From contig CP075497.1 of assembly GCA_021613535.1 (NCBI GenBank), positions 4,464,001 through 4,528,000 on the forward strand: a stretch of DNA of 64,000 bases, in the 5' to 3' direction. This document shows, one piece after another, positions 1-63,990 of this stretch; the first letter of the stretch is position 1, and each line of letters begins with the position of its first letter. Under the pieces are notes generated by a model. It was given only the letters and a program-made list of their open reading frames with translations. It was not told where the DNA came from and searched no databases. Source of the stretch: Adineta vaga. Taxonomy: Eukaryota; Animalia; Rotifera. The position numbers and the translations under genes were made by a program.

Positions 1-3000
1 AATCGAGAGAATATTACCGCTAAAGAAGTATCACCAATTAATGCTCTTGATGTCGCATTACTTATCTTTACTTTTAAATCACCATTTTTCAATCGAAAAT
101 TCATATCTTCAATATGTGTACGAAATGCTTGTATCCATCTATTTCAATAAAAGATACAAATGAATATATTTTCATAGTGAATTAGATCATTTGTTTCAAG
201 AAATCTTGCATAAATGATATTCTAGTGCAAGTCAAACTATAAGTTCGTAAAAACATACTGTCGAAGCCATTCATGTGACAAAGTTTTGATTCCTGTTCGT
301 CTTGGTTGTGTCAAATCAAGTTCCCATAACTTCCATGAATCCATTTCTGCATAAAAATGATCAAATGGATCTTGTAAACCACATTGATCGAATAGTTCTT
401 TAACGAATGGTCTAACAGAAAACAAAGAATTTTTTTACTAAAGAAATTCATAGAAGATAAAACATTTTTTTACCGAATTTGATCTCCACCTTCTAAATAC
501 CAAAAAATAAATTCACCAACAACGTCCATGCTCATTTTATTGAGAAAAGCTAATAAACGAAGATAAATGAAAATAAGTTCTACATCGTAAGTATCATAAA
601 AAAGTGGATTGAATTTTGTCAATTGTGTTAAAATTTTATCAATTAATGAATCTCGTGTTTGACCAGTTATTGAAACTGAACGAAAGTATTCATCAAGTTC
701 ATGTAAAACGGCAAATCTATCTTCGATCGAAGTAATCATTTCTAAACGTTGTAAGACATGAGCTGGAAATAAATCTTCATCACAAGTTTCAAGAAAAATC
801 TACGTTTAATCAGAGAAGATTAGTAAAAATTTGAAATGTTTTTGTAAATTAATTAACATACTTCAACTTTAATTAATGGATATTGTTCTGCAAACCAATT
901 CAATTCTACAAGTTTCTCAATGAATTGTAAAAATGTTGGAGAAAAGTCGCGTGGAGTTTTTCGACGTATTTCAATGGTTTGAGTTGCTTCATTAACGTAT
1001 GATGTAGATTCTTCGGGAACTGATGTTTGTTCATTTGTATATGGTGTTGCTGGTTTAGCACTAGGTGTTCGCACTGATTTAATTGGTGTTTGAGTTGATT
1101 TGATCGGTGAACCTGGTGTTCGTGGCGATTTAGTTGGTGAACCAGGTGTTTGAATTTGTTTTGTTGGTGAAGCAGGAGGAATTGTAGGTGAACGTCGCAA
1201 TGCTGTTTGACCAGTTGATCGAGTAGGTGCTCCTCTTGAAGCAATAGGTTTAGCAACTTCCTGGAGAAAAAAATTAAGTATTTTGAAAATAGTACATGTA
1301 GAGAATTTTGAAAGGACAAAGATTTACTTGACGTTTGCCTTTGGCTGTACTTGGTTCTTGTTCTGCTGGTGTATCTGGAGGCTGTTCAGTAGGTTGTTGA
1401 GCAAGACCAGTGAGTTGTTTCATATATTCACTTGGATCTTTTTGATTTTGTTTTTCTAAGCGATCAGCCATTTCATCATCATCAACACCAAGTTTCTTCT
1501 TCATCATAGCTTCCATCAATTCTCGCCATTCAGCTTCTTCATCCTATAGAACATGTTTTTGTGTCAATGAATGCTCTATACATATTATTATTCTGTTTAC
1601 CACTGGTTTATTTTCTTCTATTGCTTGTAATTGTTGATCTGATAATGCTGCTGGTTTCCATTCTTCTTGTTCTGATTTTTTAACCAGTAACGGATCGGGC
1701 CAAAGAAATTTCGTCTAAAAGTATGATATATTTTTCCGATAAAATTCACTTCTCTGTCTCTCTCTATTCCTTACCAAAACTGAATTGGGAACAGTTGTAC
1801 CGGGACCATAATGAGGACGTTGAAAAGGCAATGTAATCTTTTGCAAATTACTTTCTAATAATTTTTTCGCTTCAACTTTATCTTGTTCTAATTTAAGAAG
1901 ACGAATATCATCACTTGGATGAGATGATTGATAACGATATTCTTGCTGAATTTGAGATAATTTTTGTTCTCGATCATCATACATTTTCGATAAGGGATCT
2001 GAATTAGCTTCTTTCAATGAACGGAAGAATCCATTATCTTTGTCAATTATATATGGATCTGGTTCTAAATCAAATATGAAAATCATAACACTTCATTCGA
2101 ACAAGTAATTCTCAATTTTACTTGTCGGTGGTGGACCAAATAATTCTTCTTCCGTCATTTTGTACATATCTTCATCTAACATCTGAAGATTTTATAGTGG
2201 AAATAGAACTCATTGATAAAATAAATGACTTACTCCTTTCTTTGGTTCTTTTAGGAACATTTTCATATATTCATTGAATGCTTCTTTACGAACTTTTGAT
2301 GATATTTTATATTTTTTCGTTCGATGAAGTTTTCCTTCAGAAATTAGAGTTATTTCAGCATCGCGTTTTTCCAATTTTTCTAATTCCTTTTAACAACGAA
2401 ATATATTTTACGATTTCGCTCATTTATCGCCTACTTGATTTTTGCATTTTAGTTCTTCTGCTAGTTTCGCATGAAATGCAGCAAGTTCGGCATTCTCACG
2501 ATTCGTACTGATTGATCTAATTAGTTATTCGAAGAATTTTAAATGAAAAAATCTAATCGAAGAAACAAATTCTACATACATTTGATCAGCTTTATGAGCT
2601 TTCTTTAAACGAATGAGATCTTCAGATGACATACGAATCAATTGTGTTTCATCCGTTTCTTCTCGTTCTTTATTTTCTGGTTTTGTTGGTGTAAATTGCA
2701 TTGAAATTGTTTTGAAAACAATTGCTTTCGGTAAATCTTCATATCATAAATACAAAAGATCATCAGTATCTCTATTCTATTATTGAACTTACATGATAAA
2801 TGTGACATTTTATAAAGATGATCACCAATACCAATAATTAAATCTCCAGAATCATTGATAAAATGCAAGGAATGAATATTATCATGAATAATAATCATTC
2901 TAGAAAGAAATAAAACAAAATTATTCTAAGAAAAAGTCAAAGATTTATCTAAAACCTAATCAATTGATTATCTCCGTTCCAAATTCTTAATGTTCCATCT

Positions 3001-5711
3001 AGACTACTAGTAGCTAATAATTTCAATTTTGAACAACCTGATATTGCCGTTACTTTATCACAATGATCCTCTTCCGGTAGATGGTCATAACGTTCTATAA
3101 TAATATCAAATTTCAAGATTCAAAATTTTCATATGACAACAAATTACCATTATTATCTAAATTATAAAGCATTAATGAATGTGTTATTGTTGTTTCATCT
3201 CGAAAGGCAACAGCAAGTGAATTTCTCAATATTGTTAAATGAATCGGTGGTATAGCACAAAAGATTGAACGAGTTACTACAAGTGATTCCATAGCATAGG
3301 GAAATACTCGCCATATACGAATAATCAAATCTAAAATATTCACGAATAGATTGAAAAGTAACACAGAAAATATTTCATCATTACCAACACCACATGATAT
3401 AAGTTGATCAGCACTAGAATGAGAAATAACTTCAACAACTGGTCGAGTCGAATGCATCTAAATCAAAAACAATTCATTTTGTTTGTTTATTTGCTGACAA
3501 AATAAATTACACATACATCTAGTGCATAGTCAATTTCGCCAGTATCCCATTTTAATACAGCTACGCGACCATTACTTAATCCAGCAATCAATAAAGTTCG
3601 ACTAAAACCTCGAACACCAACTTGAATTAATTCACTACTTGATTTTGTTACTAAAGCTTTAAATGCTGGTTTTTCATTCATATTACCATTGGCAATATAT
3701 TCATATATAACCAAAGAATTAATTGTATCTAAATATACAAAAAATGATCTTCTTAATTAAGATTTCATATCTTTTTCTTTTTAGAAGACAAACATTCGGT
3801 AGCTTCGAACTGTTGAATGATTTTACATGGATTTAATGATGTATCTGCTTTTAAGATTCTAGTTCCATTACTGATAAATAATGTATCTAAAATTAGAAGA
3901 AATTTCTCAATCAAAATTTCTAAGAAAAAGAAAGAAGATTTTACTTTCAGCAATTGCATAAGCACATGATGTTGCTTGAAAATTTACATCATAGACCAGA
4001 CTTGTTAGAACATCACCTGTAGCACATGCAACTATTCGTACAGTTGAATCTTTACATAGAAGAACCGATCTAACAGGATAATCTGGATGTGTTGTACACA
4101 AGATTTTTAAAATTGGTGCTCTAATCAAATTGATTCAAATTTCTATTTTCTTATTCTTTCTTTTCTAACAAACCCGATAAAAGTTAAAAAATCACAATAA
4201 TGTTTTACACACCATAATTGTAAACATTTTGTTGATTTAACAATAAATTTCTCATAATTTAACGTCACATTCATTTCCGATATTGGTTCAGGAACATGAA
4301 TTCTAAATCCAATAAGATTTCATTTCCTCTTGTAATATATATATATATATAAATAACTTACACATCAACAACATCACCATATTCAAGACTCCATACACGA
4401 ATGGTTCGATCTTGACTACTAGAAATTAAATAAGGTCCAAATGGATGTTTACTTAAATATAATATTCGATCTTGATGACCAATATATGCATATAAAATAA
4501 ACCAACGATTATCCCAAACTTTAACTAATAAAACAAATAGAAATTAAATCTAAAATTATTTCCTTTCAAACAAACTTGATCCATCTCGACCAGCTGTAAC
4601 AAGAACATCACGTTGATCAATAAATATCATGGCAACAATCGGTCGAACATGTAAATCTTCTTTCTTATAGATAAGTCGTCCTTCTTCAGCAATATTATAT
4701 GTCTATAACAATGAAAACAAATTGATAAAATACTTGTTTTTCTTTTAAACAATAAATTTTCTTCGATTACCAAAACATCAAAATTAGCTGTAATAAATAA
4801 TCGTTGCATTGAACCATCTGTTTGTTCAGCAGCTAATATATTACAATTTAAATCAGATGAAACATTTTGACATTCAAATTTTGGAACAAGATGTTTTCGA
4901 TTAAAACGAAATAACCAAACCTTAACGTTGAATAATATTTTGATATTAATCTATATTTACTAATACATTATACGTACAGTAACACCTCCTTTTCCACATG
5001 TAAAAACGTCAGATGTTTTATCATTATAATTCAAATCAGTAATGTTATATTCACATGTTGATGTCGATAATACTTCAACATTTCCATTTAATACATGAAG
5101 TTCTTTTCCACCACGTGACCATGCAACAAATTCATCTTCATTTATACAATAGAATAATTCATCAAAATGAATATTAACTTTGAATTTTTTAGATATCCGA
5201 CCATCAGAATAATAAATACGAACAATTTGATCATGATCGACACTAACTATTTCCTATATTTACCATGCAATATATAATCGATGAAAATAAAATGTCAATA
5301 AAATACAGAAATCTTACATACTTTTTTCTTAATATTAAATGAAATACATTTTACTGTAATATCATGATTCATATTTCGAATAAAATGTAAACCATGAGAT
5401 CGTTCTATGTCTAAACATTCATCAATTAAACATCATATTACTAACTTATTTGCTGAGAATGTATCACAGGAGTGAACATATATTATACCTGTATCATCTG
5501 CACGTGCAACAGCATCAATCGTTCGTCGTATAGAACCTCGTAATAATCTCCACAAATATTGAGTACGATTTTCACCCCATTTCATCGGTGCTATAGATAA
5601 TTTCGTTCGATGTGTGCTATAATTTGATTGAGCACGAGATGCAGCTGGTGTGATATCATCAATTGTAGTTTGTGAATTTTCTTGAATTACATCACTTTCC
5701 TCGCTCATCAT
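1..5711 (-). CDS. WDR97: WD repeat-containing protein 97-like, multi-exon; 3' end runs off the window
   Basis: The N-terminus LWRLLRGSIRRTIDAVARADD...SHGLHFIR resembles vertebrate WDR97 LWLLLRTSLHEVVEKE...THGLEPLR. WD40 motifs are present (VTAGRDGS..KVWD, YIGHQDRI...SSSQDRTIRVWSL, ATSSLDGTLRIWN). Many short GT-AG introns. Coordinates are the gene span. Confidence 0.75.
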
Positions 5712-7985: not shown

Positions 7986-10723
7986 TTATTCGCTGTATTG
8001 ATTTTCTTTATTATTGTCATTTGATACGATCAATTGTTGATCATCAGATTTCAAGATGTCATATGTTGAATACCAGAGACGATTCGTTTGATCTTGCTGA
8101 CGAGTTATTAATGGAATTTTATTATTGACAGAATTTGTAGACCAATATAACCAGTACCAAAGAACAGTTCGAATTTTTCGAGTTGTTATACGTAAAATAC
8201 GTAAAGATTCAGCTAATTGTAAAACATCTAAATTTGAAAACACAAGAAATCCATTTTTTTATTTTGAATAGAATGACAAGATAAAGAATTTCACCTTTTT
8301 CATCAGGTAAACGTGGTTCACCGGTACGACATTTTTCTGTTGCATTCTCGATTTCTTGTCGTCGTCGATCTTGAACTGTATTGATTGCATTTAACCATTC
8401 GTCAAGAGTTTGTCCTGTTGCTTCAATATCTTGGATACTTATTCCTTCTTGAATTCGTTCATGTAAACGAATAATCTGATAGATAAAAAGGACGATTTTA
8501 TCATAAAGTTTTCAATACAATGAAATTTTCTTACTCGATTATATTCGTAATGATATTCGGCAATTAAACGATCAACACGTGATGGATTATTTGAGAGATT
8601 TGCAAAATTCGTATTGTTTATATCAGCAACAGATAAAGTAGATTTATGTAAAATTTGAATACCAATCTTCGATTCAGTCTAAACAATATATTGAAAAAGT
8701 AATACTCTATCTGTATTTTCAAAGTTATGTTTGCATCGAAAATGTGTGATACGATAATATTAAATTTTAAATTCAAACAGTAGATTAGTGTTACATATTC
8801 CTATAATCTGCAATTTTCTAACGGTAATTATTCCAATTCTGTCCTAGGATTTTTGCAAGTACCCGACTAACCATAAAACAACTTTTCAGAGATAACAATT
8901 CTTACTTCAGCATAGCTATCTCGTATGTAATTGAGTTGTTCGTAACATTTTTCGATTGCAATATCTAAACAATGAAATCATATCGGTACAAAAATAATCT
9001 ATCACAATAAATTCTTCACTTACGTAATGTGTTTGCGACACCAGTTCGTCTAAAATAAAAAGAAAACAGAGATTTTATTCATGATTATATAAACTACAAA
9101 ATTTTAATGAATTTAACAGATATTATTAAAACCATCGACAAAAGATAGATTGTTATTTGTGTACAACTGTTAGGTAAACAAAGTAAATGTGAAATAATCA
9201 AATACCTATTAGATCGATAGTAACTAAAGAAAAGATGATTTCTCAAAAAGATGTAATAGATATTAGTAGAAAACTTCATACCTCATTTCTTGACAAGAAG
9301 TAATAGGTGATGCTTGATTGGGATCGTTCATGGTCATTGTATCGTCTAAACTTAGATTTTATATCGAACTTTTCAAAATAAATCAATAATAACGTACGAG
9401 ATGATATGGGTATCATTGATAAATGTTGTCGAGAATGATTTTGTTGCTGATTTGAATTTATATCTTGAGACCATTGTTGATTAAAACCATTAATCAGACG
9501 AATATTTGTTGTAGGTAACGAAGATGATGAACTGGATGATGATAACGATTGTTGATTATGATTATTATGACGATTTCTACGTTCGTGAAATGTCGATGAA
9601 CCTGAACTACGTTGTAAACCAATTATCTGACGAAATTGTTGTAATGGAATGTTTTTTATTAGAGGATTCATTCCATTATGATCACTTTTATGTATTAGAA
9701 CTTGAACATCTTTTGGAGGATGATGTTGAATGGAACAATTATCTGTGTAATAGAGAAAAGAAAGAAATGAGTACAGGCGAAAGAAAGAGATCTGCTTTAC
9801 CTGGGATATTTCGTGGACAACCACTTTCAGAAAGTGTTGATGATAATGTCGATCTAGTTTGTCGTAATGGAAGTCTGCAAAAGAGAGATTTGTTTGATAT
9901 AAGTATAATTTGAAGAATAGAATTCTTGATAAAATTGTTAATAGAATGAAAAACTTCTCTCTGAGATTTGTATAGTATGGTGAAAGAGAAACGATCTATT
10001 TTATGATTAATATTTTAATGTAATTGCTTTCAGACGAGACATTTCATTCATACAAGTGTAATCTCGTGCACAGCTAGTTTAATAATGACAGATTTTAACA
10101 AAAAATTTAAATTATTCAGTAGTTCACTTTCAACACTGAGATATTCCTGTGAATTTAACATATATTTTATGAGACTCGGAAATTGAAAATAGAAATGAAT
10201 CTTAGAATAAAATTTCTTCATACAATAGATAAAGCCATCGACACTTATAAAACAATTTTTTTACCTTTTCATTTGTTGTATATAATGCATCTGTTGCTCT
10301 GTTTGTTCATGATTCATCCAAGATGTTTGTTGTTGTGGCATACATGTTGATATCATTCCATGTTGTTGTCGTTGATATTCATTATTTTCATCGATAATAC
10401 TCGATACCATTTCATTGAGATTAGCTGATCTATATGCATAATATTCTTTATTTTTATTAGCATTAAAATGTCTTCCTACTACCTCATTTCCGTTGGAAAA
10501 TGAACACTACTATTCAAAAACTTCTCTCCATTACCACTCGATGTTAAACCATAATGATCCATATGGCCGCTTTCATCTAAATTTCCTGTCGAATTCTGAC
10601 GTAAATATGCTCGTAGAAATCTATCATCAATCTAACGAATATAAATCTTATTCAATTATCCAAGAAAGAAGAATTTCTTACCATTGTTGCTGATGAAGAT
10701 GTTTGTAATGGCGATGATAACAT
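7986..10723 (-). CDS. MEIOC: Meiosis-specific coiled-coil domain protein MEIOC homolog, multi-exon
   Basis: The spliced C-terminus reads RTGVANTLHIAIEKCYEQL...NNPSRVDRLIAEY...VQDRRRQEIENA...DEKDVLQLAESLRILRITTRKIRTVLW. This matches the MEIOC conserved domain (RSGPASELHIRLEEC..NPSRVDRLI..RRKDEIVNA..DDRDVFALA..TRKARTALW). The N-terminus is Q/S/N-rich low complexity. Confidence 0.85.
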
Positions 10724-20343: not shown

Positions 20344-23005
20344 ATGTTGTTTACGCCTACTTTACCAATGCCTGTAGAATCAGTGTCATCTACTGAAAAG
20401 GATGAAACGTCATTGCCAACATTACCAACATCACACACACCTTCTGTATCCAATACTAAAGGCACTGAGAATCGACCTCGTGCTGTCTCTACATCATACA
20501 ATGCCACACATACTATCAACGGGCCACCAGATAATCGTTTTTTATCGACCAGTCAGACTCGTTTTTCTCAGTTACCCGATCAAGATTGGTTCTATTCTCC
20601 ATCTCCATCTTCACCATCTCGTCCATCGGTTCAGTATTTAACACCTGCATCGTCGAAAATACCAAAGAAAAAATCAGCAGCGGCTGGTCGACGCGTTTCT
20701 TGTCCAGTTGCACGTAATCCAAATAAAAAAGAAAGTCGTTTTCGCTTTCCCAGTACTATAACATCAACGATTCGTGATGTACTGATGACGAATATACATT
20801 CAACAAATCAAAATGATATCTCACATATTCCCAAGACATCAACAGCAGGAAGTGTTCGATTAAGTAGTGCTTTCTTACCCGTTGCAAATCCAGTAGCAGC
20901 CGCTGCTCTAGTCGAAGATGATGAATCAACAATCGAAGAAGGAAGGCAATCTATTACACCTTCCATAGATACACCGCGAGGTAGTGCACATTTTCATCGG
21001 ACATCAACCGAATGTTCTGCAAGTAATGCTCCAAATCAAACATATAATAATAAAGCAATTTTAAATGTTGGTGGTGTTCGACATGAAAGTAAAATTGATA
21101 GTTTTTATTAACGAGAATTATCTTGATATTTCTAGTTTTATGGCGTACACTTGCTCGTTTACCAAGCACTCGACTTGGTCGTCTAGCACGATTACGTAAA
21201 TCAACAGGCCCGTCAATACGGTCGATGCCACACGATGAATTAATACGTTTATGTGATGATTATGATTTGTCAAATGGAGAATTTTTCTTCGATCGTCATC
21301 CTCGTTCATTTACATCCGTGATTAATTTTTATCGTACAGGCAAACTTCATCTAGTCGATGATATTTGTGTTATATCATTTCATGATGATTTAGTCTATTG
21401 GGGTATTGATGAATATTATTTAGAATTATGTTGTCAAAATAAGTATCATCAAAAAAAAGAACATGTTCTTGAAGAAATGAAAAAAGAAGTTGAACTATTA
21501 AAAGTAGAAAAAGGAGAAAGTTTCGGTGAACATTGTTGTCCAAATACTCGACGAAAAGTTTGGGACCTTGTTGAACATCCTCATACGTCAAAAGGAGCAC
21601 GCGTATGTTATCTGTTTATTCTTTTCTTTTCTTTTTCTAAGAAAAATTATTTTATAATTAAATTTAGATTATTGCATTTGTCAGTATTGCCTTTATCCTT
21701 CTATCATCATTCACATTGACAATAAGTACAATCGAGGGTATAAAAGAAATCGAATGTTCCTATGTAAAAACATCATTTGACTATTTTTTGTAAAAAAATG
21801 TTTTAGGTATTGGTTGTACACCGAATATCACTGAAGCTGATGCTGCAATGGAAAAAGCAGCTGGAGTTGCTGATGCTGATGCTGTACATATTGCTGCAAA
21901 AGCTACTGCTCGCGAATTCACAACTGAACATCATGAAACAGAAAGTGATTGTCGTGAACCATTACCATTATTTATTATTGAAGCATTATGTATATCATGG
22001 TTTACAATTGAATATTTAATACGTGTTTATGCCACACCAAATAAATGTAAATTTTTCAAAGGTGTTCTCAATACAATTGATTTAATTGCTATTGTACCAT
22101 TTTATGTGTCAATTATTCTTGAAACATTAGATACAGGACATTTAAAGAATTTAAAATCCGTTCGAAAAGCTGTACAAGTCTTTCGTGTACTACGTATTAT
22201 GCGTATACTTAAACTAGCACGACATTCAACTGGTCTCCAATCATTAGGTTATACATTAAAACGAAGTTACAAGGAATTATCTATGTTATTGATGTTTCTT
22301 GCTATATTTATCTTATTATTTTCAAGTTTAGCTTATTTTGCTGAAAAAGATGGTAATGCTATTCAATTTCGATCGATTCCACATGCTTTTTGGTGGGCAA
22401 GTATTGTAAGTGAAAAAAAAACGTACTATTTAGTTTTATTTTCTTAATTATTTTCTTTTATTTTCAAAACAAAAAAGACAATGACAACTGTTGGTTATGG
22501 TGATATCTATCCGAAATCTGTGTGGGGTAAATTAATTGGTTCTGTTTGTTGTGTATGTGGTGTACTTGTTATTGCTTTACCGATTCCAATTATTGTTAAT
22601 AATTTCGCAGAATATTATAAAGAACAATTACGTCGAGAGAAAGCTTTAAAACGTAAAGAAGCTATTGATCGTGCTAAAAAGAATGGATCGATTATTTCTA
22701 TTCAATCACAAAGTTTAGCTAATTCAAGGCTATCGACTGGGGATATTCAAGGACGTCGAGCAAGTACATTGAAATGTCGTTCAAGCATAGTACAATCAAC
22801 TGATGAACCTTTACATGATCCAGCATGTTATGAGAAGAAAGTCCCAATAACATCGATGAAACAAATTCCATTTACACTTGATCTTTTTCCCGATGCACAT
22901 GAGAATTTAAAATTACATGAAGACGATGTTAAAGAAGCATTGCTGACTGTACAAGATAATCCCATTACAGATGAAAAGAATATTGCAACATCAACTGATA
23001 TTTGA
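20344..23005 (+). CDS. Shab: Voltage-gated K+ channel, Kv2/Shab subfamily, 5 coding exons
   Basis: T1 domain [46 protein letters not shown]; S4 [23 protein letters not shown]; pore TMTTVGYGD; S6 [14 protein letters not shown]. Confidence 0.93.
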
Positions 23006-56098: not shown

Positions 56099-56160
56099 AT
56101 AGAATGATTTCCGTTTTTTGAATCCAAAACGCGAGTCGATCTATGGCAGAAGTCCCAAGG
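56099..56160 (-). pseudogene. Degenerate relic of the U2 snRNA 3' part and downstream flank
   Basis: 56132-56148 matches U2 57908-57924 at 14/17, and 56099-56115 matches the U2 downstream flank 57843-57859 at 16/17. It occupies the same position relative to a minus-strand SL gene. Confidence 0.6.
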
Positions 56161-56293
56161 AACTCAATTCAACTTTACCGATCTTTCCACTTTCATGAGA
56201 GAAAGAAAGGAACGTATCTAACGACCCTCAAGATTGATCTTTCTTTCATTTCGCAATGCAGAGGAGTGATGTTAATTTTGTATTAAAAGAAAA

Positions 56294-56404
56294 GTGTTGC
56301 TCTGGCAGATCAGTGTTGCCACTAATTCGCACGATTTCGTCATCGCAACATTTGTTTGATCTAGTAAGATCATTTACCTCTTGGTATAAGTTGTAATACT
56401 AAGC
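56294..56404 (-). ncRNA. Spliced-leader RNA gene A (variant leader GCTTAGTATTACAACTTATACCAAGAG)
   Basis: A leader-like exon is followed by the GTAAAT donor. The SL intron is homologous to copy B (TGTTGCGATGACGAAATC..TGGCAACACTGATCTGCCAGAGCAACAC) and keeps its stems. Confidence 0.8.
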
Positions 56405-56536
56405 AACTAGCTCGTTGGTTGTAAAGTAAAGTACTTTTCTTCAGTCTCTATATATTTAGTTTCAGAGCGAACGTAGGAAAAAGAGAAAGTGTAGAGACAC
56501 GCTAGAGGGCGTGGATCTTTGATCGTGGAGAAAGTT

Positions 56537-56641: not shown

Positions 56642-57878
56642 TTTTCATAATCGAATATAAATTAAAAAAAATAGAGAGAGAATTGACAATAGTGTCAAAG
56701 TTGAAATTTATTGAAAATCAATCCATTATTAAAATCACATGTACGATGGCGTCACACCGTAGTGTATTCAAATTGTCTGTTGTACATTTTATTAAATAAA
56801 AGAGAGTGTTCTTTCAATGTGGACGGGCGTTGTCTTAAAGGTTGGGTGTGGATGTATATGACACTATGCTTTTAACCCACACCCTATGTATAGTACAGTG
56901 AGAAAATCTTGAGAATACTAAAGCATGCAGGCAAATAAGCACCCATATATAGCATTTTCATTCTTTCAACCGTCAGTCATTTTGCATTTGATTCAACTTT
57001 ACCCATTGAATCCGACCATTTCTTGGATTCTGTACAAATGCGCAAAAACAATAGAAGATGTTTCTCATGCGTTTAACCAACTATATTTGAGTTCATTGTT
57101 ATTACTAATAAAACAAAATACAATAAGAAACTGCTTCTGTTCGAACATCACATGATATTAACAGTTGCGAATTACAATATAGAATCTTAGACTAAAAAGT
57201 GATTTCATCGGTATTATTGTTCGTTTTTCCACAATAATGCCCGCTTATGTAAGAAACAGTCTATGTGACAACCTTCTATCTACTCGTAAGGTACAGAATC
57301 ATTTACTTTATTCTTTCTTATATTTGGTGCAACTAGTTGTTTTATTAATATTGTACTCCATTCTGACGACAACTTTGTGAACATAAATTAGAAGAAGAAT
57401 TTCAACAATATGATCATCAACATTCTTCGAGAGAGTAAGCGTTCGGAAAGGTAATCCAATTCATTTGATAAACCTTTGAATATCGAGACGTTCAGATCTG
57501 GATAACCAAAAGATACGTATCTTTTCAATATTCTGCTTTTCTTTTCTATGAGTATCATTTCAAACATTTCTTGTAATATAGCTACAAAGTAAAAATAGAA
57601 CTTCGCGGATCTTTACCGGACCAGCAATAAGATCTTCATTTTATATATAATGGTTTTCCAATAATTGCATCTCAGTAACATGATGTGAAGAATGATTTAT
57701 CTCAGCAATTAAAATCTATGCTCGACAACGGAAAGATATCGACTGATGACAATATTGTTATGCCTGAACAGCACTTTCACCTTAAAATAACGAAAATCAA
57801 ATAAGAAAAGAAATATGTTTTATTTTCATTTTGAATTTGTTGATAGAATGATTCCCGTTGTCCCGAAAGAGAACGGGA

Positions 57879-58069
57879 GTGGACCAAACTCGACGGCACT
57901 GCAGTGTCGAGACGATCCGTGGCACAGGTCCGAGTGAACTCGGGTGATCCTGGCCCATGTCCAAAAATCTGCTTGAAAGAGCCTGGCCTCAATGAGACCA
58001 GCGCCGGCTTTCAAACCGACGAGAACAGATACTACACTTTGATCTTAGCCGAAAAGGCCGAGAAGCGAT
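57879..58069 (-). ncRNA. U2: U2 snRNA
   Basis: Reverse complement ATCGCTTCTCGGCCTTTTCGGCTAAGATCAAAGTGTAGTATCTGTTCT.., with branch-point pairing GTAGTA, Sm site AGATTTTTGG and stem-loops III/IV. About 190 nt; the 3' end is approximate. Confidence 0.97.
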
Positions 58070-58226
58070 AACTAACTGCAACATTTCCTTTCTCTTTTCT
58101 CCACCATGTCTGCACACATTTCATTTTTAGTTTTTTTTACCCGAACGAAAATAGTCATCGAATTATTTCGTAATGAAACGAAATTACATTAGATTGTTTT
58201 TTCTTTGCTTTGTTTTGAATGAAAGA

Positions 58227-58321
58227 GTGCTGCTCTGGTAGATCAGTGTTAATCACCAATCTACACAACATGAATTTGATTTAGTAAGATCGTTTACCTC
58301 TTCGTATAAGTTGTAATAAGT
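58227..58321 (-). ncRNA. Spliced-leader RNA gene C (variant leader ACTTATTACAACTTATACGAAGAG; internal deletion, possibly a pseudogene)
   Basis: The leader, GTAAAC donor and 3' end AACACTGATCTACCAGAGCAGCAC are homologous to copy A. The GATGACGAAATC block shared by A and B is missing. Confidence 0.7.
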
Positions 58322-58623
58322 AACTTTATTCGATGATGTGAAGAGAACGATATTGTTTTAGTCTGTACATATCGGACGTATGTAAACAAAAGAAAAGTGA
58401 CGTCATTAGGATATGATGTCATCGATCGACTGCTTGTTTAATTAATACAATGATCATGAATGACTATTGTGCATTCTCAATGAGAATAATGATAAGATGT
58501 AGAATTAGAGATGGAGTTTTACGTAGAAAGTGTTGAATGTTAGGAGATCTTGTGTTTGGGGAAAACCTCTGATGTGATAGTTGAACGATTGTAAAGTGTA
58601 AAGTGCATGAACAAAATAGATGA

Positions 58624-58672
58624 CGTGGATCTTCGACTAAGAAGAAAGTTGCTTATTACAACTTAACAAGAG
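58624..58672 (+). promoter_or_regulatory. SL RNA gene D remnant: upstream element plus genomically encoded SL exon fused to the downstream ORF
   Basis: CGTGGATCTT at -27 and AGAAAGTT at -8, exactly as in copy B. Then GCTTATTACAACTTAACAAGAG (21/22 to SL B) follows with no GT donor. Confidence 0.85.
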
Positions 58673-58682
58673 ATAATGAACC

Positions 58683-60185
58683 ATGTATAATGGTCTGATG
58701 CTAGTCAAATTTTTTTATTTCTTTGTCGTTCTATTTTTATCTACGACAAAATTAAGTATCGGACAGCAAACGGTTGTTTATGTTAAACGTGGTGAAACAG
58801 TAGAATTATGCGACAATCGTACAACATCGATCTATGCTTATGGATATCGAAGTTTTGATGGAAAGAAAAATTCTATCCTTGAACCACCTAAACATCAACG
58901 CTATTCCAATCCATATGGAACAAGTGTTTTACGAATTGATAATGTTGTTGACAGTGATAGTGGACTATATAAATGTCCACAAGATGATACTGAATGGCAA
59001 AAACTTCAAGTGTATGTACCCGTCCAACATGTCCATTTAACTAATTTGCATACATCATCTCGTGTATATAATAATGATCTTTGTGGTATTGATGGTACAA
59101 ATTGTTTAACAATGATTGAAGATGAATTGTTAGATGTTATTTGTGCTGCAGATGGTTCTCCACGTCCAGCACTTTCAATAACATTAGATAAAAATGGAAC
59201 GACACCAACGATTATGGTTTTAGCAAGTAATACTCCAATACCAACAACGATCAATGATCAATTTAAACCGACTGTGTATGAAGCACATCGTATAACTGGA
59301 TTGACATCAGCAGATAATGGAAGAAATTTAACATGTCATGTTGATATGAAACAAATGGATAAAAGTCTTATTCTATCATCAACAAAACAACTTAATATTG
59401 AATTTCGACCTGTTGTAGCTGAAAAATCGAAGAAAATCTATTGTGGAATCAATCAAACACGTACAATTAATTGTACTGTTTTACGGGCTAATCCATCTAA
59501 TATACGTTATTCAATCAATGGCTTATCATCATCATCAGTAGTACGTCGAACATATGGTGATCAAAATAATTTATTTTATACATTTGATATAACACCAACA
59601 TCAATCGAACAATATCATTCATTTAATGTAACAGCGAATAATAGTATTGGTTTCGATACGTGCACTTATGAACTGATACATGGAGGTATACCTGATGCAA
59701 TTACACATTGTACAATCGATACATATTCATCGAAAATAACGACAACGATTAATTGTACAAAAAGTTACGCTGAAGGTGATAATGAAGGTTATACTTGTAT
59801 ATTATTTAAGTACAATAGTAAATCTAATCATGAGATGTTCGAAGAAATAGCCCGAACAAAATCTTGTATATTTGCTCTTGAAAATTTCAATGAACCTGTA
59901 GAATTTCGTGTCGCAGCATTTAATCGTTATGGATTATTGCCGATTCATACATTTGGATATGTTATTCGATTGAATCAACCATTCAACGATACTATCGCAC
60001 ATCTGGTTCCAGATGGAAATGAATCACCTGTATATTCGACTACGACTGATGTTATGTCAGAAAGTGACTCATTTCTTGTACCATCATCATCGAAACGTAA
60101 TGAACCACCTCCACCTAAACCACGTTCACGTTCAAATTCTCGAACACGTTTAAATAATCCTACAGTTCGTGGGACTGAAAGTTAA
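58683..60185 (+). CDS. Intronless Ig-superfamily protein (signal peptide, about 3 Ig-like domains, FN3-like domain), probable retrogene
   Basis: 500-aa uninterrupted ORF with a hydrophobic N-terminus. Ig motifs VKRGETVELC..LRIDNVVDSDSGLYKC, VICAADGSPRP..DNGRNLTCHV and INCTVLRANP..VTANNSIG; FN3-like FRVAAFNRYG. Confidence 0.88.
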   Translation: MYNGLMLVKFFYFFVVLFLSTTKLSIGQQTVVYVKRGETVELCDNRTTSIYAYGYRSFDGKKNSILEPPKHQRYSNPYGTSVLRIDNVVDSDSGLYKCPQDDTEWQKLQVYVPVQHVHLTNLHTSSRVYNNDLCGIDGTNCLTMIEDELLDVICAADGSPRPALSITLDKNGTTPTIMVLASNTPIPTTINDQFKPTVYEAHRITGLTSADNGRNLTCHVDMKQMDKSLILSSTKQLNIEFRPVVAEKSKKIYCGINQTRTINCTVLRANPSNIRYSINGLSSSSVVRRTYGDQNNLFYTFDITPTSIEQYHSFNVTANNSIGFDTCTYELIHGGIPDAITHCTIDTYSSKITTTINCTKSYAEGDNEGYTCILFKYNSKSNHEMFEEIARTKSCIFALENFNEPVEFRVAAFNRYGLLPIHTFGYVIRLNQPFNDTIAHLVPDGNESPVYSTTTDVMSESDSFLVPSSSKRNEPPPPKPRSRSNSRTRLNNPTVRGTES

Positions 60186-61358
60186 ATCTATTTCTTCTTC
60201 TAATGTGTTGTTGTGTGTATATATATATATATACAAAGTTTGTTTGTTTATCTTTCTTCATACAAATCTCTTTATATGTATATGTTCTATGAGTATTCTA
60301 ATCGAACAACTCAAGACTATATTGGGAAAAAAAGAGAAAAGAAAACAAGTTTAAACGCAACTATCAAAGATGATGAACTTGTGATCTTTTGCATTCGTTT
60401 GTTATTATATAGTTTATTGTCTTCTTTTTATACATGCGTTTCAGTGCAAATGTGTGTGAGTTCTTTTCTTTTTGTTCTTTATTTGCTACTGTTGATTCTC
60501 ATGATACGATGATCTCTCCAGATTTCTCCTTTCTTTTTTCCTTCTTTTTCTTTGTACTTGTATGAAAAAAGACTGTAGATAAAACTCGAACATTTTGTAT
60601 TAATGCAAAGAATAAAAAAAATAAAATATAAGAGGGAGAATTGACAGATTATGATACTGGTGGATGAACGAGTGGTGGAATACGATTAAAGCGGTAGTCA
60701 CATTTTGAAGGTGGTTTTTTTCATCAAACTTTATACAACTCAAAAGTTATTGTCATATTCTAACCCCTGGATATTACTACTAGAAACTGACTAACGTGGA
60801 GAAAATTCAGCAGATTTATTTTTGTATGACTTTGGTCTGCATGATATATAAGATCAAAAGTATTATTTCAAGTAAATTAATCAATGAAGAATTTATTGTT
60901 CCAAATTTTTCTGTCTTGATACATGATTTTCGTTGCGACACATAGTTATCATGACTACATGCTTGATAATTAGTTCAATGTGATATAAATATAGAAAGTC
61001 TGGAAATGAAAAATAATAATTTGTTTTTATATCTCGTTAGAAAGAGTGGTTGGGAAAACTATTTCATTATTTTGACAAGATAATTTCCGTTGAAATATCA
61101 ACGTCATCCATTTCACCGTATATGTATGATTTTTAGAGACGACTGAATAATAACTGCTATGTATTGAAGACCTATTTAAAGTTTGATGAAAAAACGACCT
61201 AGAAGTCGTAAATAATTTTTGTCCTATTCGTTGAGTAAGTTTTGAGATTTATGACTTATTGCTTTGATTCGAAAGAAACCTTAATAATACACTGATACGT
61301 GTCAATCTGAATTTCAATAAGTATTTCTGTCAAATATGTAATTCATCTTCTAAATTAA

Positions 61359-63990
61359 TTGATCATGTTTATCCAAATCAATCAACTGATAACCGGATTG
61401 AGAACAAATTATATTCTTGTTACAGAACAGTTTGGATTGTCACAACAGATGAAATCACACGTAAAGGTAAGTTCAATGCAAGTATCTTTATACTCTGGTA
61501 TATTTGGAAACAAATATATACAAAAACGTTCTGCTATACCTTGTTCATGTCCCCTACCTGATAATCTTTATTTGTCTTATATGACGGAACAATTTGATAT
61601 TTATGATATGAACAAAATTGAATCAAATGAAAGTTTATCACTACAAATGACATTTGCATCAATATTAGAATGTATGTTGGTTTCAGCAATCATGTTTAAA
61701 TCTTCTTCTCTCATCTTATCAAACAAGTCGCTTCCATCCAACAACAACAATTCAATCACTGCTCAAAGCACTTTTCATTGAAGAAATTTTAAATGAAACA
61801 AACTATGAAGAATACTATTTAATATGCTTGTCAAATGGTTATAGCTATTATTTTATGTATCGATTTAATTGGCTATATGTGTTGACAACTTTGATCGATC
61901 TTTGTGGAGGATTATTACTACTACTATATGTCACCACACTATGTGTAATCATGAATAAATACATTACTTTAGATGAACGTTTTTTTACATTGTTTGAAAA
62001 ATATACTTATGAAAACCAAAGATCAACTGATGGAATTCAATCTATATCATAAAAATACACATGACCCAATACTTATTTATCGTGACCGTTTATCCACACG
62101 ATTGTATCGTATTTTATTAGTTTTTTCGATATGTATACCATTATTATTCATTAAAATCTAACAGTTAAATCGATTAGTGAGATCGTTGCAAACCCATCTA
62201 ACGAAATATATGAAGTATTGAAAAAAAATATTCATCAACATTAAGATGTCCTTGTACACAAATGTCTATTCAATATGAAGATTTTATCAACATACCAATG
62301 AGATATCATCAAATTTGTTCGAGTGATTTTATTCAACCATGGTGGTACCAAAGTATACTTCCTCAAAATACTTCAGATATGGTAATACCTAAATTTGTCT
62401 CATTAAGACTGAGTTTATCTATCGCATATCTTTGACGAAAACATTACTTCATAGTAATCAATATGTAAGTAATATGTAATATGTGAACATTCTTATTCAA
62501 GAATAAAAACGAAACCAACATATTCTCTCAATGAAAATAATACAAGATGTTATTGTGTTATTGATTCAATATGTAATTTAGACAATCGATCTGTTAGTAG
62601 TGGTCTATATATTCAATTTGATTGGCAACTTGAAGGAATACATGAAGGTTACTCCATAGTTGATTCTGTATTAAAATCATCAATAATATGTTGGTTCAAA
62701 ATCAATTGTATCAATAAGTTAAAACAACTTTTGAATGAGTCGAAAATTCCAATACCTTTCTCAATTACTCCATTTAATTCAATACTACCTAGTCGATATT
62801 CTTCTGCAGCACCATTTGAATCTTATTTTGTTTATTCACTTATCAGAAGGAAAATGATTTTACATACATAATCATTATCAATATTAGTTTTATTGGTGGA
62901 ATCAGTATTATTACTCATTATTAACATTATTTGTAAATTGGACATGGCGATTAAACATCTATGACAATGAATCAAATGATCCTGGAACTATTAATCGCGA
63001 AAGATTGAGTACAAGATTAAATTTTGTCATCTTATTCATTTTATTTTATACCTTAACTATATATTCAATGATCGCTCAAGATAGACCTATCAATATAGTT
63101 TTTTCCAATCCAGCTGAAAGTGATTATAAAAAGTTAATGATATTGTATTCAACACAACTTCAGTATCCTCGTCAGAAAATATCTGTTGAATACAAATATT
63201 TCACTGATATTAGTACAACGTTCCATCAAATTTGTTAGTATAGTATGGCGTGAGTGTGTGTTTCTTGATGAGTATTGCTATAATTATTCAAGAACTGACA
63301 TTCGTTCACGTGGTAGTATCTATTTTTTATTTCTTTCAACTTTATGTCGACTATCCCAAACAATCGTAAATAATGCTATTGATCAATTTCTCAATAAATC
63401 ATTCATCAATACTCGAGTCATATCAAAATCTGAATGTCCTCTTCGAATTAACGACACATTATTGAATGATAATGGAAGATGGATGTTCTTCCGAAACGCA
63501 ACGTAATTGCAGTGAATCAGGTGAAATTTATTATGATACTTCAGATAAGCGAATATTTGCACTACCTGGATGGAATATTGGATGTTCAGTAGTTGAAACA
63601 ATCTTACAATCAACACTTGAATGCTTTTATGATCGAGTATGTCTACAATCCTTACTATTCTATGCAACAACAGTCTTAAATCGATATCCCTATGAAATGA
63701 ATATAACAGCTATGGATTCTTCGAAAACAAGCCGTTTCAGACGTGATACTTTCATTCAAAACATAGTTGATGAATTATTCGTTGGAGAATGCAAAATAAA
63801 TAAATATTATTCATTATTTTATCATGCGTGTGCTCCAATTTATTGTTCATATACAATTCGTAAAGAAAATTATTATATATATACAACAGCAACATTGTTA
63901 GGATTATTTGGAGGAATAACTATTGTATTGAAACCAATTGTTCCAGTTTTCATAAAACTAACCTTCAAAATTATACATCGATACCAATGA
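61359..63990 (+). pseudogene. Disrupted member of a Cys-rich repeated-module membrane protein family
   Basis: Repeated modules (STRLY..TM..NPS..LRCPC..YHQICSSDF; GC..S.LEC.YD..C; YHACAP.YCSY..LLGLFGG) occur at least twice but are broken by stops and frameshifts (FIKI*, FHQIC*). Confidence 0.65.

What the first reader, a model, noticed from the sequence alone, without database searches (positions are those of the whole stretch)
58624..60646. A trans-spliced mRNA appears to have been recombined into an SL RNA gene: retrogene with a captured SL promoter
Seen: (1) The SL exon GCTTATTACAACTTAACAAGAG (58651-58672) is fused, with no GT donor, 10 nt before the ATG of a 1503-nt intronless ORF, in a window where almost all long genes are intron-rich. 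(2) The DNA upstream of this leader is homologous to the upstream of intact SL gene B, with CGTGGATCTT at exactly -27 and AGAAAGTT at -8 in both. An mRNA-derived copy cannot carry that sequence. (3) After the 3' UTR, an A-rich tract (about 60607-60630) is followed by AGAGGGAGAATTGACA (60631-60646). This is 15/16 identical to AGAGAGAGAATTGACA (56673-56688), which follows the A-run downstream of SL gene B. (4) The locus sits in the SL(+) slot of a duplicated U2(-)/SL(-)/SL(+) cassette. Inference: a cDNA of an SL-capped polyadenylated mRNA replaced the SL intron by recombination, using SL homology at the 5' end and polyA/A-run homology at the 3' end. Every trans-spliced mRNA shares the leader, so SL RNA genes could act as general landing pads that give retrocopies a ready-made strong promoter. 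The intact 500-aa ORF suggests recent origin or selection.
Basis: partly seen in the sequence, partly recalled or inferred. Interest (0 to 1): 0.95.

Follow-up and report, generated by a model that had tools for sequence, protein, structure and literature searches.

The report
Retrocopied gene inside a spliced-leader gene
In the rotifer Adineta vaga, a reverse-transcribed copy of a trans-spliced mRNA has replaced the intron half of a spliced-leader RNA gene and so inherited its promoter; two more genes and a spliced-leader-specific LINE in the same genome have the same layout, which suggests a route by which retrocopies land next to a ready-made promoter.

Summary

**The copy.** Window 58673-60614 is an intronless copy of an Ig-domain gene on contig C1, about 96% identical in nucleotides. 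Four introns are removed at canonical sites. The leader joins exactly at the parent's trans-splice acceptor (AG|ATAATGAAYCATG). Homology ends at the parent's 3' end, followed by 5-7 extra A.

**The site.** The same slot on the duplicated (ohnologous) chromosome C5, and a 96.6%-identical paralog 9 kb away, both hold an intact SL gene. The copy replaced 90-92 bp, which is the whole intron part.

**It is recurrent.** All three GT-less SL exons in the 100.8-Mb genome sit behind SL promoters and lead straight into retrocopies: this gene, a methionyl-tRNA synthetase, and TFIIA-gamma. A three-copy APE/RT LINE found only in SL genes has the same layout. One LINE copy shows a 5' join inside the SL exon. 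The TFIIA-gamma copy's A-tail abuts the LINE's own cut site.

**Likely mechanism.** Target-primed reverse transcription, with the 5' end resolved by annealing in the leader. cDNA-templated break repair is not excluded.

**Limits.** This copy is young and truncated (500 vs 757 aa, no transmembrane exon) and evolves neutrally. Transcription is suggested but not proven. No read contig covered the 5' junction.

The parts
57874..58069 (-). U2 snRNA gene of the cassette
   Evidence: Rfam RF00004, 141 bits, full length
58196..58322 (-). Head-to-head SL(-) partner gene C. Variant exon, GT donor present, central intron core (TTGCGATGACGAAA) missing.
58398..58593 (.). About 196-nt spacer absent from the C5 ohnolog but shared with the C6 paralog. 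It explains the 345-nt rather than 157-nt spacing of this SL pair.
   Evidence: the ohnolog alignment jumps from 58397 to 58594; the paralog L049 is continuous
58594..58650 (+). SL RNA gene promoter retained from the target gene. PSE-like box GTGCATGAACA at 58603-58613 (consensus GTGTAGAGACA), CGTGGATCTT at 58624-58633, AGAAAGTT at 58643-58650.
58651..58672 (+). SL exon with no GT donor after it. C>A at 58666 is unique among the 61 genomic SL exons.
58673..58682 (+). 5' UTR of the parent mRNA, starting at the base after the parent's trans-splice acceptor AG
58683..60185 (+). Intronless 500-aa ORF with signal peptide and Ig domains. Exon joins at 59016|59017, 59403|59404, about 59685|59686, and 59985|59986 (transmembrane exon skipped). 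Microhomology deletions at about 60023, 60126 and 60165; the last shifts the frame.
60186..60614 (+). 3' UTR of the parent mRNA (88.6% identical, with indels). Homology ends at GCAAAGAATA.
60615..60621 (+). Remnant of the poly(A) tail: 5-7 A that neither the parent nor the empty site templates
60622..60760 (+). Downstream flank of the former SL gene, colinear with the C5 ohnolog. Includes the conserved AGAGGGAGAATTGACA at 60631-60646, which may be a 3'-end formation element of this SL subfamily (inference).

Best explanation
This is a processed retrocopy of a spliced-leader-capped, polyadenylated mRNA that integrated into an SL RNA gene. SHOWN: the copy runs from the first base after the parent's trans-splice acceptor to the parent's 3' end plus a short A tail. 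It lacks the parent's introns. It replaced 90-92 bp (the whole intron part of the SL RNA gene), while the SL promoter, the SL exon and the downstream flank stayed in place. INFERRED MECHANISM: reverse transcription was primed by the poly(A) tail on the A/T-rich stretch just past the SL RNA 3' end, by a LINE endonuclease/reverse transcriptase. The far end of the cDNA, which is the complement of the 22-nt leader, then annealed to the gene's own SL exon. That sealed the 5' junction without a target-site duplication and removed the DNA in between. The three internal deletions at 5-10-nt microhomologies fit template slippage during reverse transcription. A resident LINE family that lives only in SL genes uses the same layout (SL promoter, SL exon, payload, A tail, rest of the SL gene). 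It is the leading candidate for the machinery, or at least shows that the pathway operates here. CONSEQUENCE: any transcript starting at the SL start site carries a genome-encoded leader and needs no trans-splicing. STATUS OF THIS COPY: it is young, truncated (no transmembrane exon, most of the tail deleted) and evolving neutrally, so it is best seen as a new, probably transcribed retrocopy rather than a selected gene. Confidence in the structure is about 0.95. The figure below is for structure plus the reverse-transcription mechanism together.
For: The parent on C1 matches in eight blocks at 88.6-96.9% nucleotide identity; an ohnolog with the same exon pattern lies on C4. Canonical GT-AG sites are removed at four joins, and the transmembrane exon is skipped at canonical sites. 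The 5' join is at the acceptor: parent ...tttcttAG|ATAATGAATCATG, copy ...CAAGAG|ATAATGAACCATG. The 3' end reads parent GCAAAGAATA|gatatc; copy the same plus A(7) then ATAAAATATAAGAGG...; empty site CTTCTAATA|ATAAAATATAAGAGAG.... Empty-site comparators with intact SL genes exist: the C5 ohnolog, colinear on both sides, and a 96.6%-identical C6 paralog; 90-92 bp were replaced. Recurrence: a genome-wide scan found 3 GT-less SL exons behind an SL promoter, all fused to retrocopies, plus one promoter-less chance match. The MetRS copy keeps the 3' two-thirds of the SL intron after its stop codon. The TFIIA-gamma copy has A8 followed by the SL intron from position 8 (21/32 in register, P=2.5e-4). 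The LINE has ORF1 with zf-CCHC and ORF2 with Exo_endo_phos, RVT_1 and zf-RVT. It has exactly 3 copies, all in SL genes and in the same orientation. Its A(10-18) tail abuts intron position 8. Copy C5:10915938 has a promoter of one SL subfamily and an intron start of another, so its 5' join lies within the SL exon. A 48%-identical relative on another contig also sits between an SL exon and the rest of an SL intron. Independent runs hold contigs that span junctions specific to the retrocopy, and one contig spans the 3' junction.
Against: The 3' junction of this copy lies after the SL RNA 3' end, not at the LINE's own cut site (intron position 7/8). Trans-mobilisation by that LINE is therefore not shown for this locus. 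There is no target-site duplication and the A tail is short, which fits cDNA-templated repair equally well. No contig in any of the four runs covered 58648-58721 at my 98% threshold, so reads did not independently confirm the 5' fusion. The promoter box at this slot (GTGCATGAACA) departs from the consensus at 4 of 11 positions, so promoter strength is unknown.
Confidence: 0.6

Rival explanations
1. A free cDNA (or the mRNA itself) served as template or donor in homologous or microhomology-mediated repair of a break in the SL gene. The 22-nt leader provided homology on one side, and poly(A) pairing with the A-rich stretch after the SL RNA provided it on the other. No retrotransposon endonuclease acted at the site.
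For: Both junctions lie in sequence shared by the mRNA and the target: the SL exon, and the A-rich AATAATAAAATA stretch. There is no target-site duplication, the tail is only 5-7 A, and exactly the intervening 90-92 bp is replaced. The 3' junction is not at the LINE cut site. From my own knowledge: bdelloids repair many desiccation-induced breaks, and cDNA capture at breaks and cDNA-mediated recombination are documented in yeast.
Against: The TFIIA-gamma copy's A8 tail abuts the LINE cut site in register. The LINE itself shows SL-exon 5' joining. Together these show that a reverse-transcription route into SL genes exists here. A/T-rich 3' junctions are also typical of APE-type endonuclease nicks.
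Confidence: 0.3
2. This is a selected new gene: a soluble, transmembrane-less Ig-domain isoform expressed from the SL promoter and kept by selection.
For: The 500-aa ORF is open, with a signal peptide and Ig domains. The exon skip and two of the three deletions are in frame. Contigs specific to the retrocopy occur in two runs that look like RNA. The older MetRS copy does show constraint: omega 0.39 against its parent, and P<=0.02 of staying open by chance.
Against: The retrocopy lineage has 4 synonymous and 21 nonsynonymous changes, while the parent lineage has 11 and 13. The ORF stays open by chance with P about 0.3. The third deletion shifts the frame.
Confidence: 0.12
3. This is an assembly artefact or cDNA contamination that created a false SL-ORF fusion.
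For: No contig in four runs covers 58648-58721 at 98% identity.
Against: The parent gene has no leader in its DNA, so an assembler cannot create this join from genomic reads. Both flanks are syntenic with the ohnolog. A 2013 run spans the 3' junction, and a 2015 DNA run spans junctions specific to the retrocopy. Two further loci have the same layout. The read gap may come from my strict 98% threshold applied to short contigs.
Confidence: 0.02

Closest known systems
LINE-mediated processed pseudogenes and retrogenes (L1-type target-primed reverse transcription acting in trans on mRNAs)
   Same: An intronless full-length mRNA copy with an A tail, a 3' junction on A/T-rich DNA, and microhomology at the 5' end.
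   Different: The landing site is not random: all 3 SL-bearing copies are in SL RNA genes. The 5' join uses the 22-nt leader shared by the mRNA and the target. There is no target-site duplication, and 90-92 bp of target is replaced instead. The copy inherits a promoter and a transcription start.
Dinoflagellate and Paulinella 'mRNA recycling': retrogenes with relic spliced leaders (Slamovits and Keeling 2008, as cited in PMC9311404; PMC6050394; PMC12014239)
   Same: DNA-encoded leader at the 5' end of an intronless copy of a trans-spliced mRNA.
   Different: Those copies are described as integrating by non-homologous recombination at other loci and being trans-spliced again, which leaves tandem relic leaders. 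Here a single leader is the SL gene's own exon position, with the SL promoter upstream and SL gene remnants downstream.
SL-gene-specific retrotransposons: SLACS/CZAR of trypanosomatids and NeSL-1 of nematodes (PMC4640811 and my own knowledge)
   Same: Multicopy SL RNA genes used as a safe, specific landing site. The A. vaga LINE found here also lives only in SL genes.
   Different: Those elements carry a restriction-like endonuclease and cut in the SL exon. The A. vaga family is APE-type (L1/Tx1-like domain set) and cuts the intron at position 7/8. In the finding itself the payload is a host mRNA, not a transposon.
5' junction formation by co-transcript homology in site-specific LINEs such as R2/R1
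   Same: Target-derived sequence at the 5' end of the RNA anneals to the target and gives a precise 5' junction. LINE copy C5:10915938 shows this with the SL exon.
   Different: Here host mRNAs acquire the same homology tag by trans-splicing, so any trans-spliced mRNA mimics the element's RNA.

Membership tests
Processed retrocopy of an mRNA | Parent's introns missing at canonical splice sites | tested here: met
   four GT-AG joins, one of which skips the transmembrane exon.
Processed retrocopy of an mRNA | Copy starts at the mature mRNA 5' end (leader joined at the trans-splice acceptor) | tested here: met
   parent AG|ATAATGAATCATG; copy CAAGAG|ATAATGAACCATG.
Processed retrocopy of an mRNA | A tail at the parent's 3' end | tested here: met
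   5-7 untemplated A after GCAAAGAATA.
Processed retrocopy of an mRNA | Target-site duplication flanking the insert | tested here: not met
   no duplication; 90-92 bp of target replaced.
Functional retrogene | Purifying selection on the copy | tested here: not met
   4 synonymous and 21 nonsynonymous changes on the retrocopy lineage; the open ORF is expected by chance with P about 0.3.
Functional retrogene | Transcribed from its new locus | tested here: inconclusive
   contigs with retrocopy-specific alleles and deletion junctions in runs X10 and X12, with no flank coverage. The RNA nature of those runs is only a guess, and the 5' end is not covered.
SL RNA gene (snRNA-type) | SL exon followed by a GT donor and an intron with the conserved core | tested here: not met
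   no GT and no intron. The promoter, exon and downstream flank remain, so this is a former SL gene.
Insertion made at the cut site of the SL-specific LINE | A tail abutting SL intron position 8 | tested here: not met
   the junction of this copy lies after the SL RNA 3' end. The feature is met by the TFIIA-gamma copy and by the three LINE copies.
Dinoflagellate-type relic-SL retrogene | Integration at an unrelated locus, with re-trans-splicing and tandem relic leaders | tested here: not met
   a single leader, located in an SL gene slot.

The most novel reading that the evidence does not exclude
In bdelloid rotifers, trans-splicing tags mRNAs with the same 5' sequence that an SL-gene-specific LINE uses to home into SL RNA genes. 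Host mRNAs are therefore occasionally retrocopied into SL genes by that machinery. They arrive with a working snRNA-type promoter, a start site and a genome-encoded leader, and some (MetRS, TFIIA-gamma) are kept as working genes. This would be a built-in answer to the 'promoter problem' of retrogenes.
Probability: 0.5. Interest if true: 0.88.

Novelty: new variant of a known kind. Interest (0 to 1): 0.8.

Why it matters
Retrocopies normally arrive without a promoter, and most die for that reason. Here the leader that trans-splicing puts on mRNAs also serves as a homology tag. It directs full-length cDNAs into SL RNA genes, just downstream of a promoter and start site.

Three independent cases in one 100.8-Mb genome, two of them housekeeping genes with signs of constraint, suggest a reproducible route to new expressed genes.

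The finding also links three things so far treated separately: SL trans-splicing, target-specific LINEs and retrogene birth. It gives a testable prediction for any trans-splicing lineage that has SL-targeting elements, such as nematodes and trypanosomatids.

I found no description of retrogenes inside SL genes in the searchable literature.

Tried and rejected
- **Reads.** Only contigs were available, and I set 98% identity to keep the 96%-identical parent out. As a result no contig was laid on 58648-58721 in any run, so the 5' junction and the diagnostic A remain untested by reads.
- **Possible second parental haplotype.** Contig X16_17 joins retrocopy-type exon 1 alleles to the parent's intron 1. 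I first took this as evidence for an unassembled parental haplotype. At depth 2.7, with a 34-nt shared stretch at the join, it may instead be a chimeric contig, so I make no claim.
- **Exact-protein look-ups** of the three retrocopy proteins in public assemblies returned nothing.
- **Metagenome scan** for GT-less leaders returned only two contigs that look like transcripts, with Rab-like ORFs starting at the leader. They are not informative.
- **Other candidate sites.** Orphan SL-intron cores on C3 and C6 (L057, L058, L060) are diverged SL genes. L059 and the C6:4305773 hit are chance matches.
- **TFIIA-gamma tail, free alignment.** A free local alignment of the tail region to SL introns was not above shuffles (43 vs 36 +/- 4.5). 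Only the anchored, in-register test was significant.
- **MetRS 3' junction.** It could not be placed to the base. The parent's 3' UTR no longer aligns.
- **Promoter comparison.** An ungapped comparison anchored at +1 mis-registers the Ig and MetRS subfamilies, so only the TFIIA-gamma figure (24/26) is meaningful.
- **Spliced models.** Parent genes were compared exon by exon throughout.
Full report
**Identity of the genome.** The window is C6:4464001-4528000 of a 100.8-Mb, six-contig assembly. Proteins encoded at the loci studied carry Adineta vaga names in public databases (I4U23 locus tags).

**The observation**

The 22-nt bdelloid spliced leader lies at 58651-58672. It has one change, C>A at 58666, that none of the other 60 genomic SL exons share.
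- It is followed by ATAATGAACC and an ATG ORF at 58683-60185 (500 aa), not by a GT donor.
- Upstream lie a head-to-head SL(-) gene (about 58196-58322) and a U2 gene (57874-58069; Rfam 141 bits).
- The first cassette in the window has no detectable U2.

**It is a retrocopy**

A six-frame search of the genome found the ORF in pieces at two other places: C1:2484607-2488253, and with lower identity on C4, which is the ohnolog of the C1 gene.

Exon-by-exon alignment of the window to C1 gives eight blocks at 88.6-96.9% nucleotide identity, covering 58671-60614.
- Four joins fall at canonical GT-AG sites. One of them skips the parent's transmembrane exon.
- Three further gaps, at about 60023, 60126 and 60165, are not introns. 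They have no GT-AG and lie between 5-10-nt direct repeats. The last one shifts the frame and gives an 8-aa new tail.
- The annotated parent protein is 757 aa, and its bdelloid orthologs are 696-816 aa. The 500-aa product is therefore a truncated form with no transmembrane segment.
- Pfam sees only Ig-type domains.

All parent comparisons were done exon by exon.

**The two junctions**
- **5' end.** The parent reads (polypyrimidine tract)AG|ATAATGAATCATG. The copy reads ...CAAGAG|ATAATGAACCATG. The leader therefore sits exactly where trans-splicing would put it.
- **3' end.** Homology to the parent stops at GCAAAGAATA (60614). Then come seven A. Then comes sequence that matches the SL gene's downstream flank.

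**The empty site**

The flanks are syntenic with a cluster on C5. Window 57450-58397 and 58594-58675 align on one side, and 60617-62892 on the other. In between, C5 holds an intact SL gene, C5:10928265(-).

A paralogous cassette 9 kb downstream on C6 is 96.6% identical over 877 nt, right up to 58675. It also continues into an intact SL gene.

Compared with the ohnolog, the copy replaced 90-92 bp: the whole intron part of the SL RNA gene, up to the A-rich stretch after it. There is no target-site duplication.

**The pattern recurs**

I collected all 61 SL exons in the genome with their flanks. I then relaxed the search to three mismatches. Exactly three SL exons behind an SL promoter lack a GT donor; a fourth GT-less match (C6:4305773) is a promoter-less chance hit. 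Each of the three has a recognisable SL promoter upstream and runs straight into an intronless ORF with an intron-bearing parent elsewhere.

| Case | Locus | Parent | 5' join | 3' side |
|---|---|---|---|---|
| Ig-domain gene (this finding) | window 58651-60621 | C1, four canonical introns removed plus one exon skipped | AG\|ATAATG... | A(5-7), then the flank just past the SL RNA |
| Methionyl-tRNA synthetase, 636 aa | C3:6910782 | C3:9709997-9712544, about ten short introns | AG\|ATCATGG | 18 nt after the stop codon, then the 3' two-thirds of an SL intron |
| TFIIA-gamma, 118 aa | C3:16762070 | C6:8889542-8890011 | AG\|AATGGCC | A8, then the SL intron from position 8 |

For TFIIA-gamma, homology to the parent's 3' UTR ends at ...TCTTTCAG. 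The match to the SL intron after the A8 is 21/32 in register, P=2.5e-4.

No partial-leader copy was found outside SL genes with an exact 15-mer.

**A LINE with the same layout**

Three SL genes are interrupted at the same intron position by a 5.1-kb element, in the same orientation as the SL gene.
- ORF1 has a CCHC knuckle. ORF2 has APE-type endonuclease, reverse transcriptase and zf-RVT domains.
- The genome holds exactly these three copies. Two have an intact 1137-aa ORF2.
- The A(10-18) tail abuts intron position 8. Positions 8-19 also occur at the 5' side.
- Copy C5:10915938 has the promoter of the local SL subfamily, but its first 19 intron bases belong to another subfamily, and after its A tail the local subfamily resumes. 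The 5' part must therefore have travelled with the RNA, and the 5' join lies inside the shared SL exon.
- Relatives occur across bdelloids, at 48-83% identity. A 48%-identical relative on another contig lies between a variant SL exon with its promoter and A(24) plus the rest of an SL intron.

**Mechanism**

A trans-spliced mRNA looks like this LINE's RNA: leader at the 5' end, poly(A) at the 3' end. The simplest account has two steps.
1. Reverse transcription is primed at a nick in the SL gene.
2. The new cDNA end, which is the complement of the leader, anneals to the gene's SL exon.

The TFIIA-gamma copy fits use of the LINE's own cut site. The Ig copy's 3' junction lies instead on the A/T-rich stretch after the SL RNA. 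For this locus the enzyme is therefore unknown: an off-site nick, another LINE, or a repaired break. The three microhomology deletions fit a slipping reverse transcriptase.

**Age and selection**

| Comparison | dS | dN | omega | Source |
|---|---|---|---|---|
| Ig copy vs assembled parent | 0.056 | 0.033 | 0.59 | |
| Ig parent vs C4 ohnolog (background) | 0.54 | 0.15 | 0.28 | |
| MetRS copy vs parent | 0.17 | 0.067 | 0.39 | |

- **Ig copy.** Polarised with the C4 ohnolog, the retrocopy lineage has 4 synonymous and 21 nonsynonymous changes. The parent lineage has 11 and 13. With 25-29 random substitutions the ORF stays open in about 30-35% of simulations. The copy is therefore young and unconstrained.
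- **MetRS copy.** It changes 2.5-3 times faster than its parent in amino acids: 44-53 vs 18-19, polarised with three other bdelloids. Even so, it would stay open by chance with P<=0.02. That suggests it is, or was, functional.
- **TFIIA-gamma copy.** It matches 24 of 26 strongly conserved promoter positions, while its SL exon and intron remnant have decayed. This fits continued use of the promoter.
- **This slot's promoter.** The promoter box here is off-consensus. The same variant is present at the intact ohnologous gene.

**Reads**

DNA runs from several studies hold the stretch. All four runs laid were contigs only, at 98% identity.
- A DNA run (X2) and two small runs that look like RNA (X10, X12) hold contigs with retrocopy-specific alleles. 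These contigs span the exon-skip and deletion junctions with 0-2 differences.
- X10 and X12 have no contig on either flank, whereas X2 does.
- A 2013 run has a contig that spans the 3' junction (60439-60745).
- No run has a contig on 58648-58721.

Transcription is therefore suggested but not proven, and the 5' junction rests on the assembly and on the logic of the structure.

**Literature**

The searchable library describes two related things:
- retrogenes with relic leaders in dinoflagellates and Paulinella, integrating non-homologously (PMC9311404, PMC6050394, PMC12014239);
- SL-specific elements with restriction-like endonucleases (PMC4640811).

I found nothing on retrocopies inside SL genes, or on an APE-type SL-specific LINE in rotifers. 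Absence from this library is not proof that the finding is new.

Noticed in passing
L056 (C3:6908000-6917000) 2720-4800: Second case. SL promoter, then SL exon ATTTATTACAACTTACCAAGAT, then an intronless 636-aa methionyl-tRNA synthetase ORF (2806-4716), then the 3' two-thirds of an SL intron. The intron-bearing parent is at C3:9709997-9712544. Omega is 0.39, and an open ORF is unlikely by chance.
   Followed up: yes
L065 (C3:16757500-16763000), minus strand, about 4060-4630: Third case. SL promoter (24/26 conserved positions), then SL exon ACTTATTACAAATTACCAAAAG, then an intronless 118-aa TFIIA-gamma ORF, its 3' UTR, A8, and the SL intron from position 8. The parent, with introns, is at C6:8889542-8890011.
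   Followed up: yes
L044 3937-9053 (C5:10915938+); also L062 and L063: A 5.1-kb APE/RT LINE (ORF1 with zf-CCHC; ORF2 of 1137 aa) present in three copies, all inside SL gene introns in the sense orientation. The A tail abuts intron position 8. Relatives occur across bdelloids, and L071 shows a 48%-identical relative that is also inside an SL gene.
   Followed up: yes
L044 3880-3975 and 9040-9100: This LINE copy is a hybrid. Its promoter and post-tail intron belong to the local SL subfamily (gtatatatcg...), but its first 19 intron bases belong to the gtaaatatc subfamily. This implies that the LINE RNA starts at or before the SL exon and that the 5' end joins by SL-exon homology.
   Followed up: partly
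window 59016-59364: In DNA run X2 a 349-nt contig starting at the exon-2 boundary carries parent-type letters at six of the eleven sites that separate copy from parent, and copy-type letters at the rest. This could be an allelic variant, gene conversion between copy and parent, or an unassembled parental haplotype. It is unresolved.
   Followed up: partly
window 56673-56688 and 60631-60646; also L044 about 9160-9176 and L045: The 16-mer AGAGRGAGAATTGACA recurs shortly after the SL RNA 3' end in this SL subfamily, although the surroundings diverge. It may be a 3'-end formation signal.
   Followed up: no
window 56260-56405 (-): SL gene A has a variant exon with inserted bases (GCTTAGTATTACAACTTATACCAAGAG) and lacks the promoter motifs of gene B. 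The neighbouring region at about 56100-56250 resembles only the 3' end of U2 and scores with no Rfam family.
   Followed up: partly
L057, L058, L060 (C3:4975674, C3:5966259/5966500, C6:5166934): Diverged SL genes with variant leaders (for example GCTTCCTGCAACTGTAACAAGAG and ACTTATTACATTTACCAAGAG) that keep the intron core TTGCGATGACGAAA.
   Followed up: no
window 22490-22603 (+): Rfam match to K_chan_RES, the potassium channel RNA editing signal: 65 bits against a gathering score of 51, full length.
   Followed up: no
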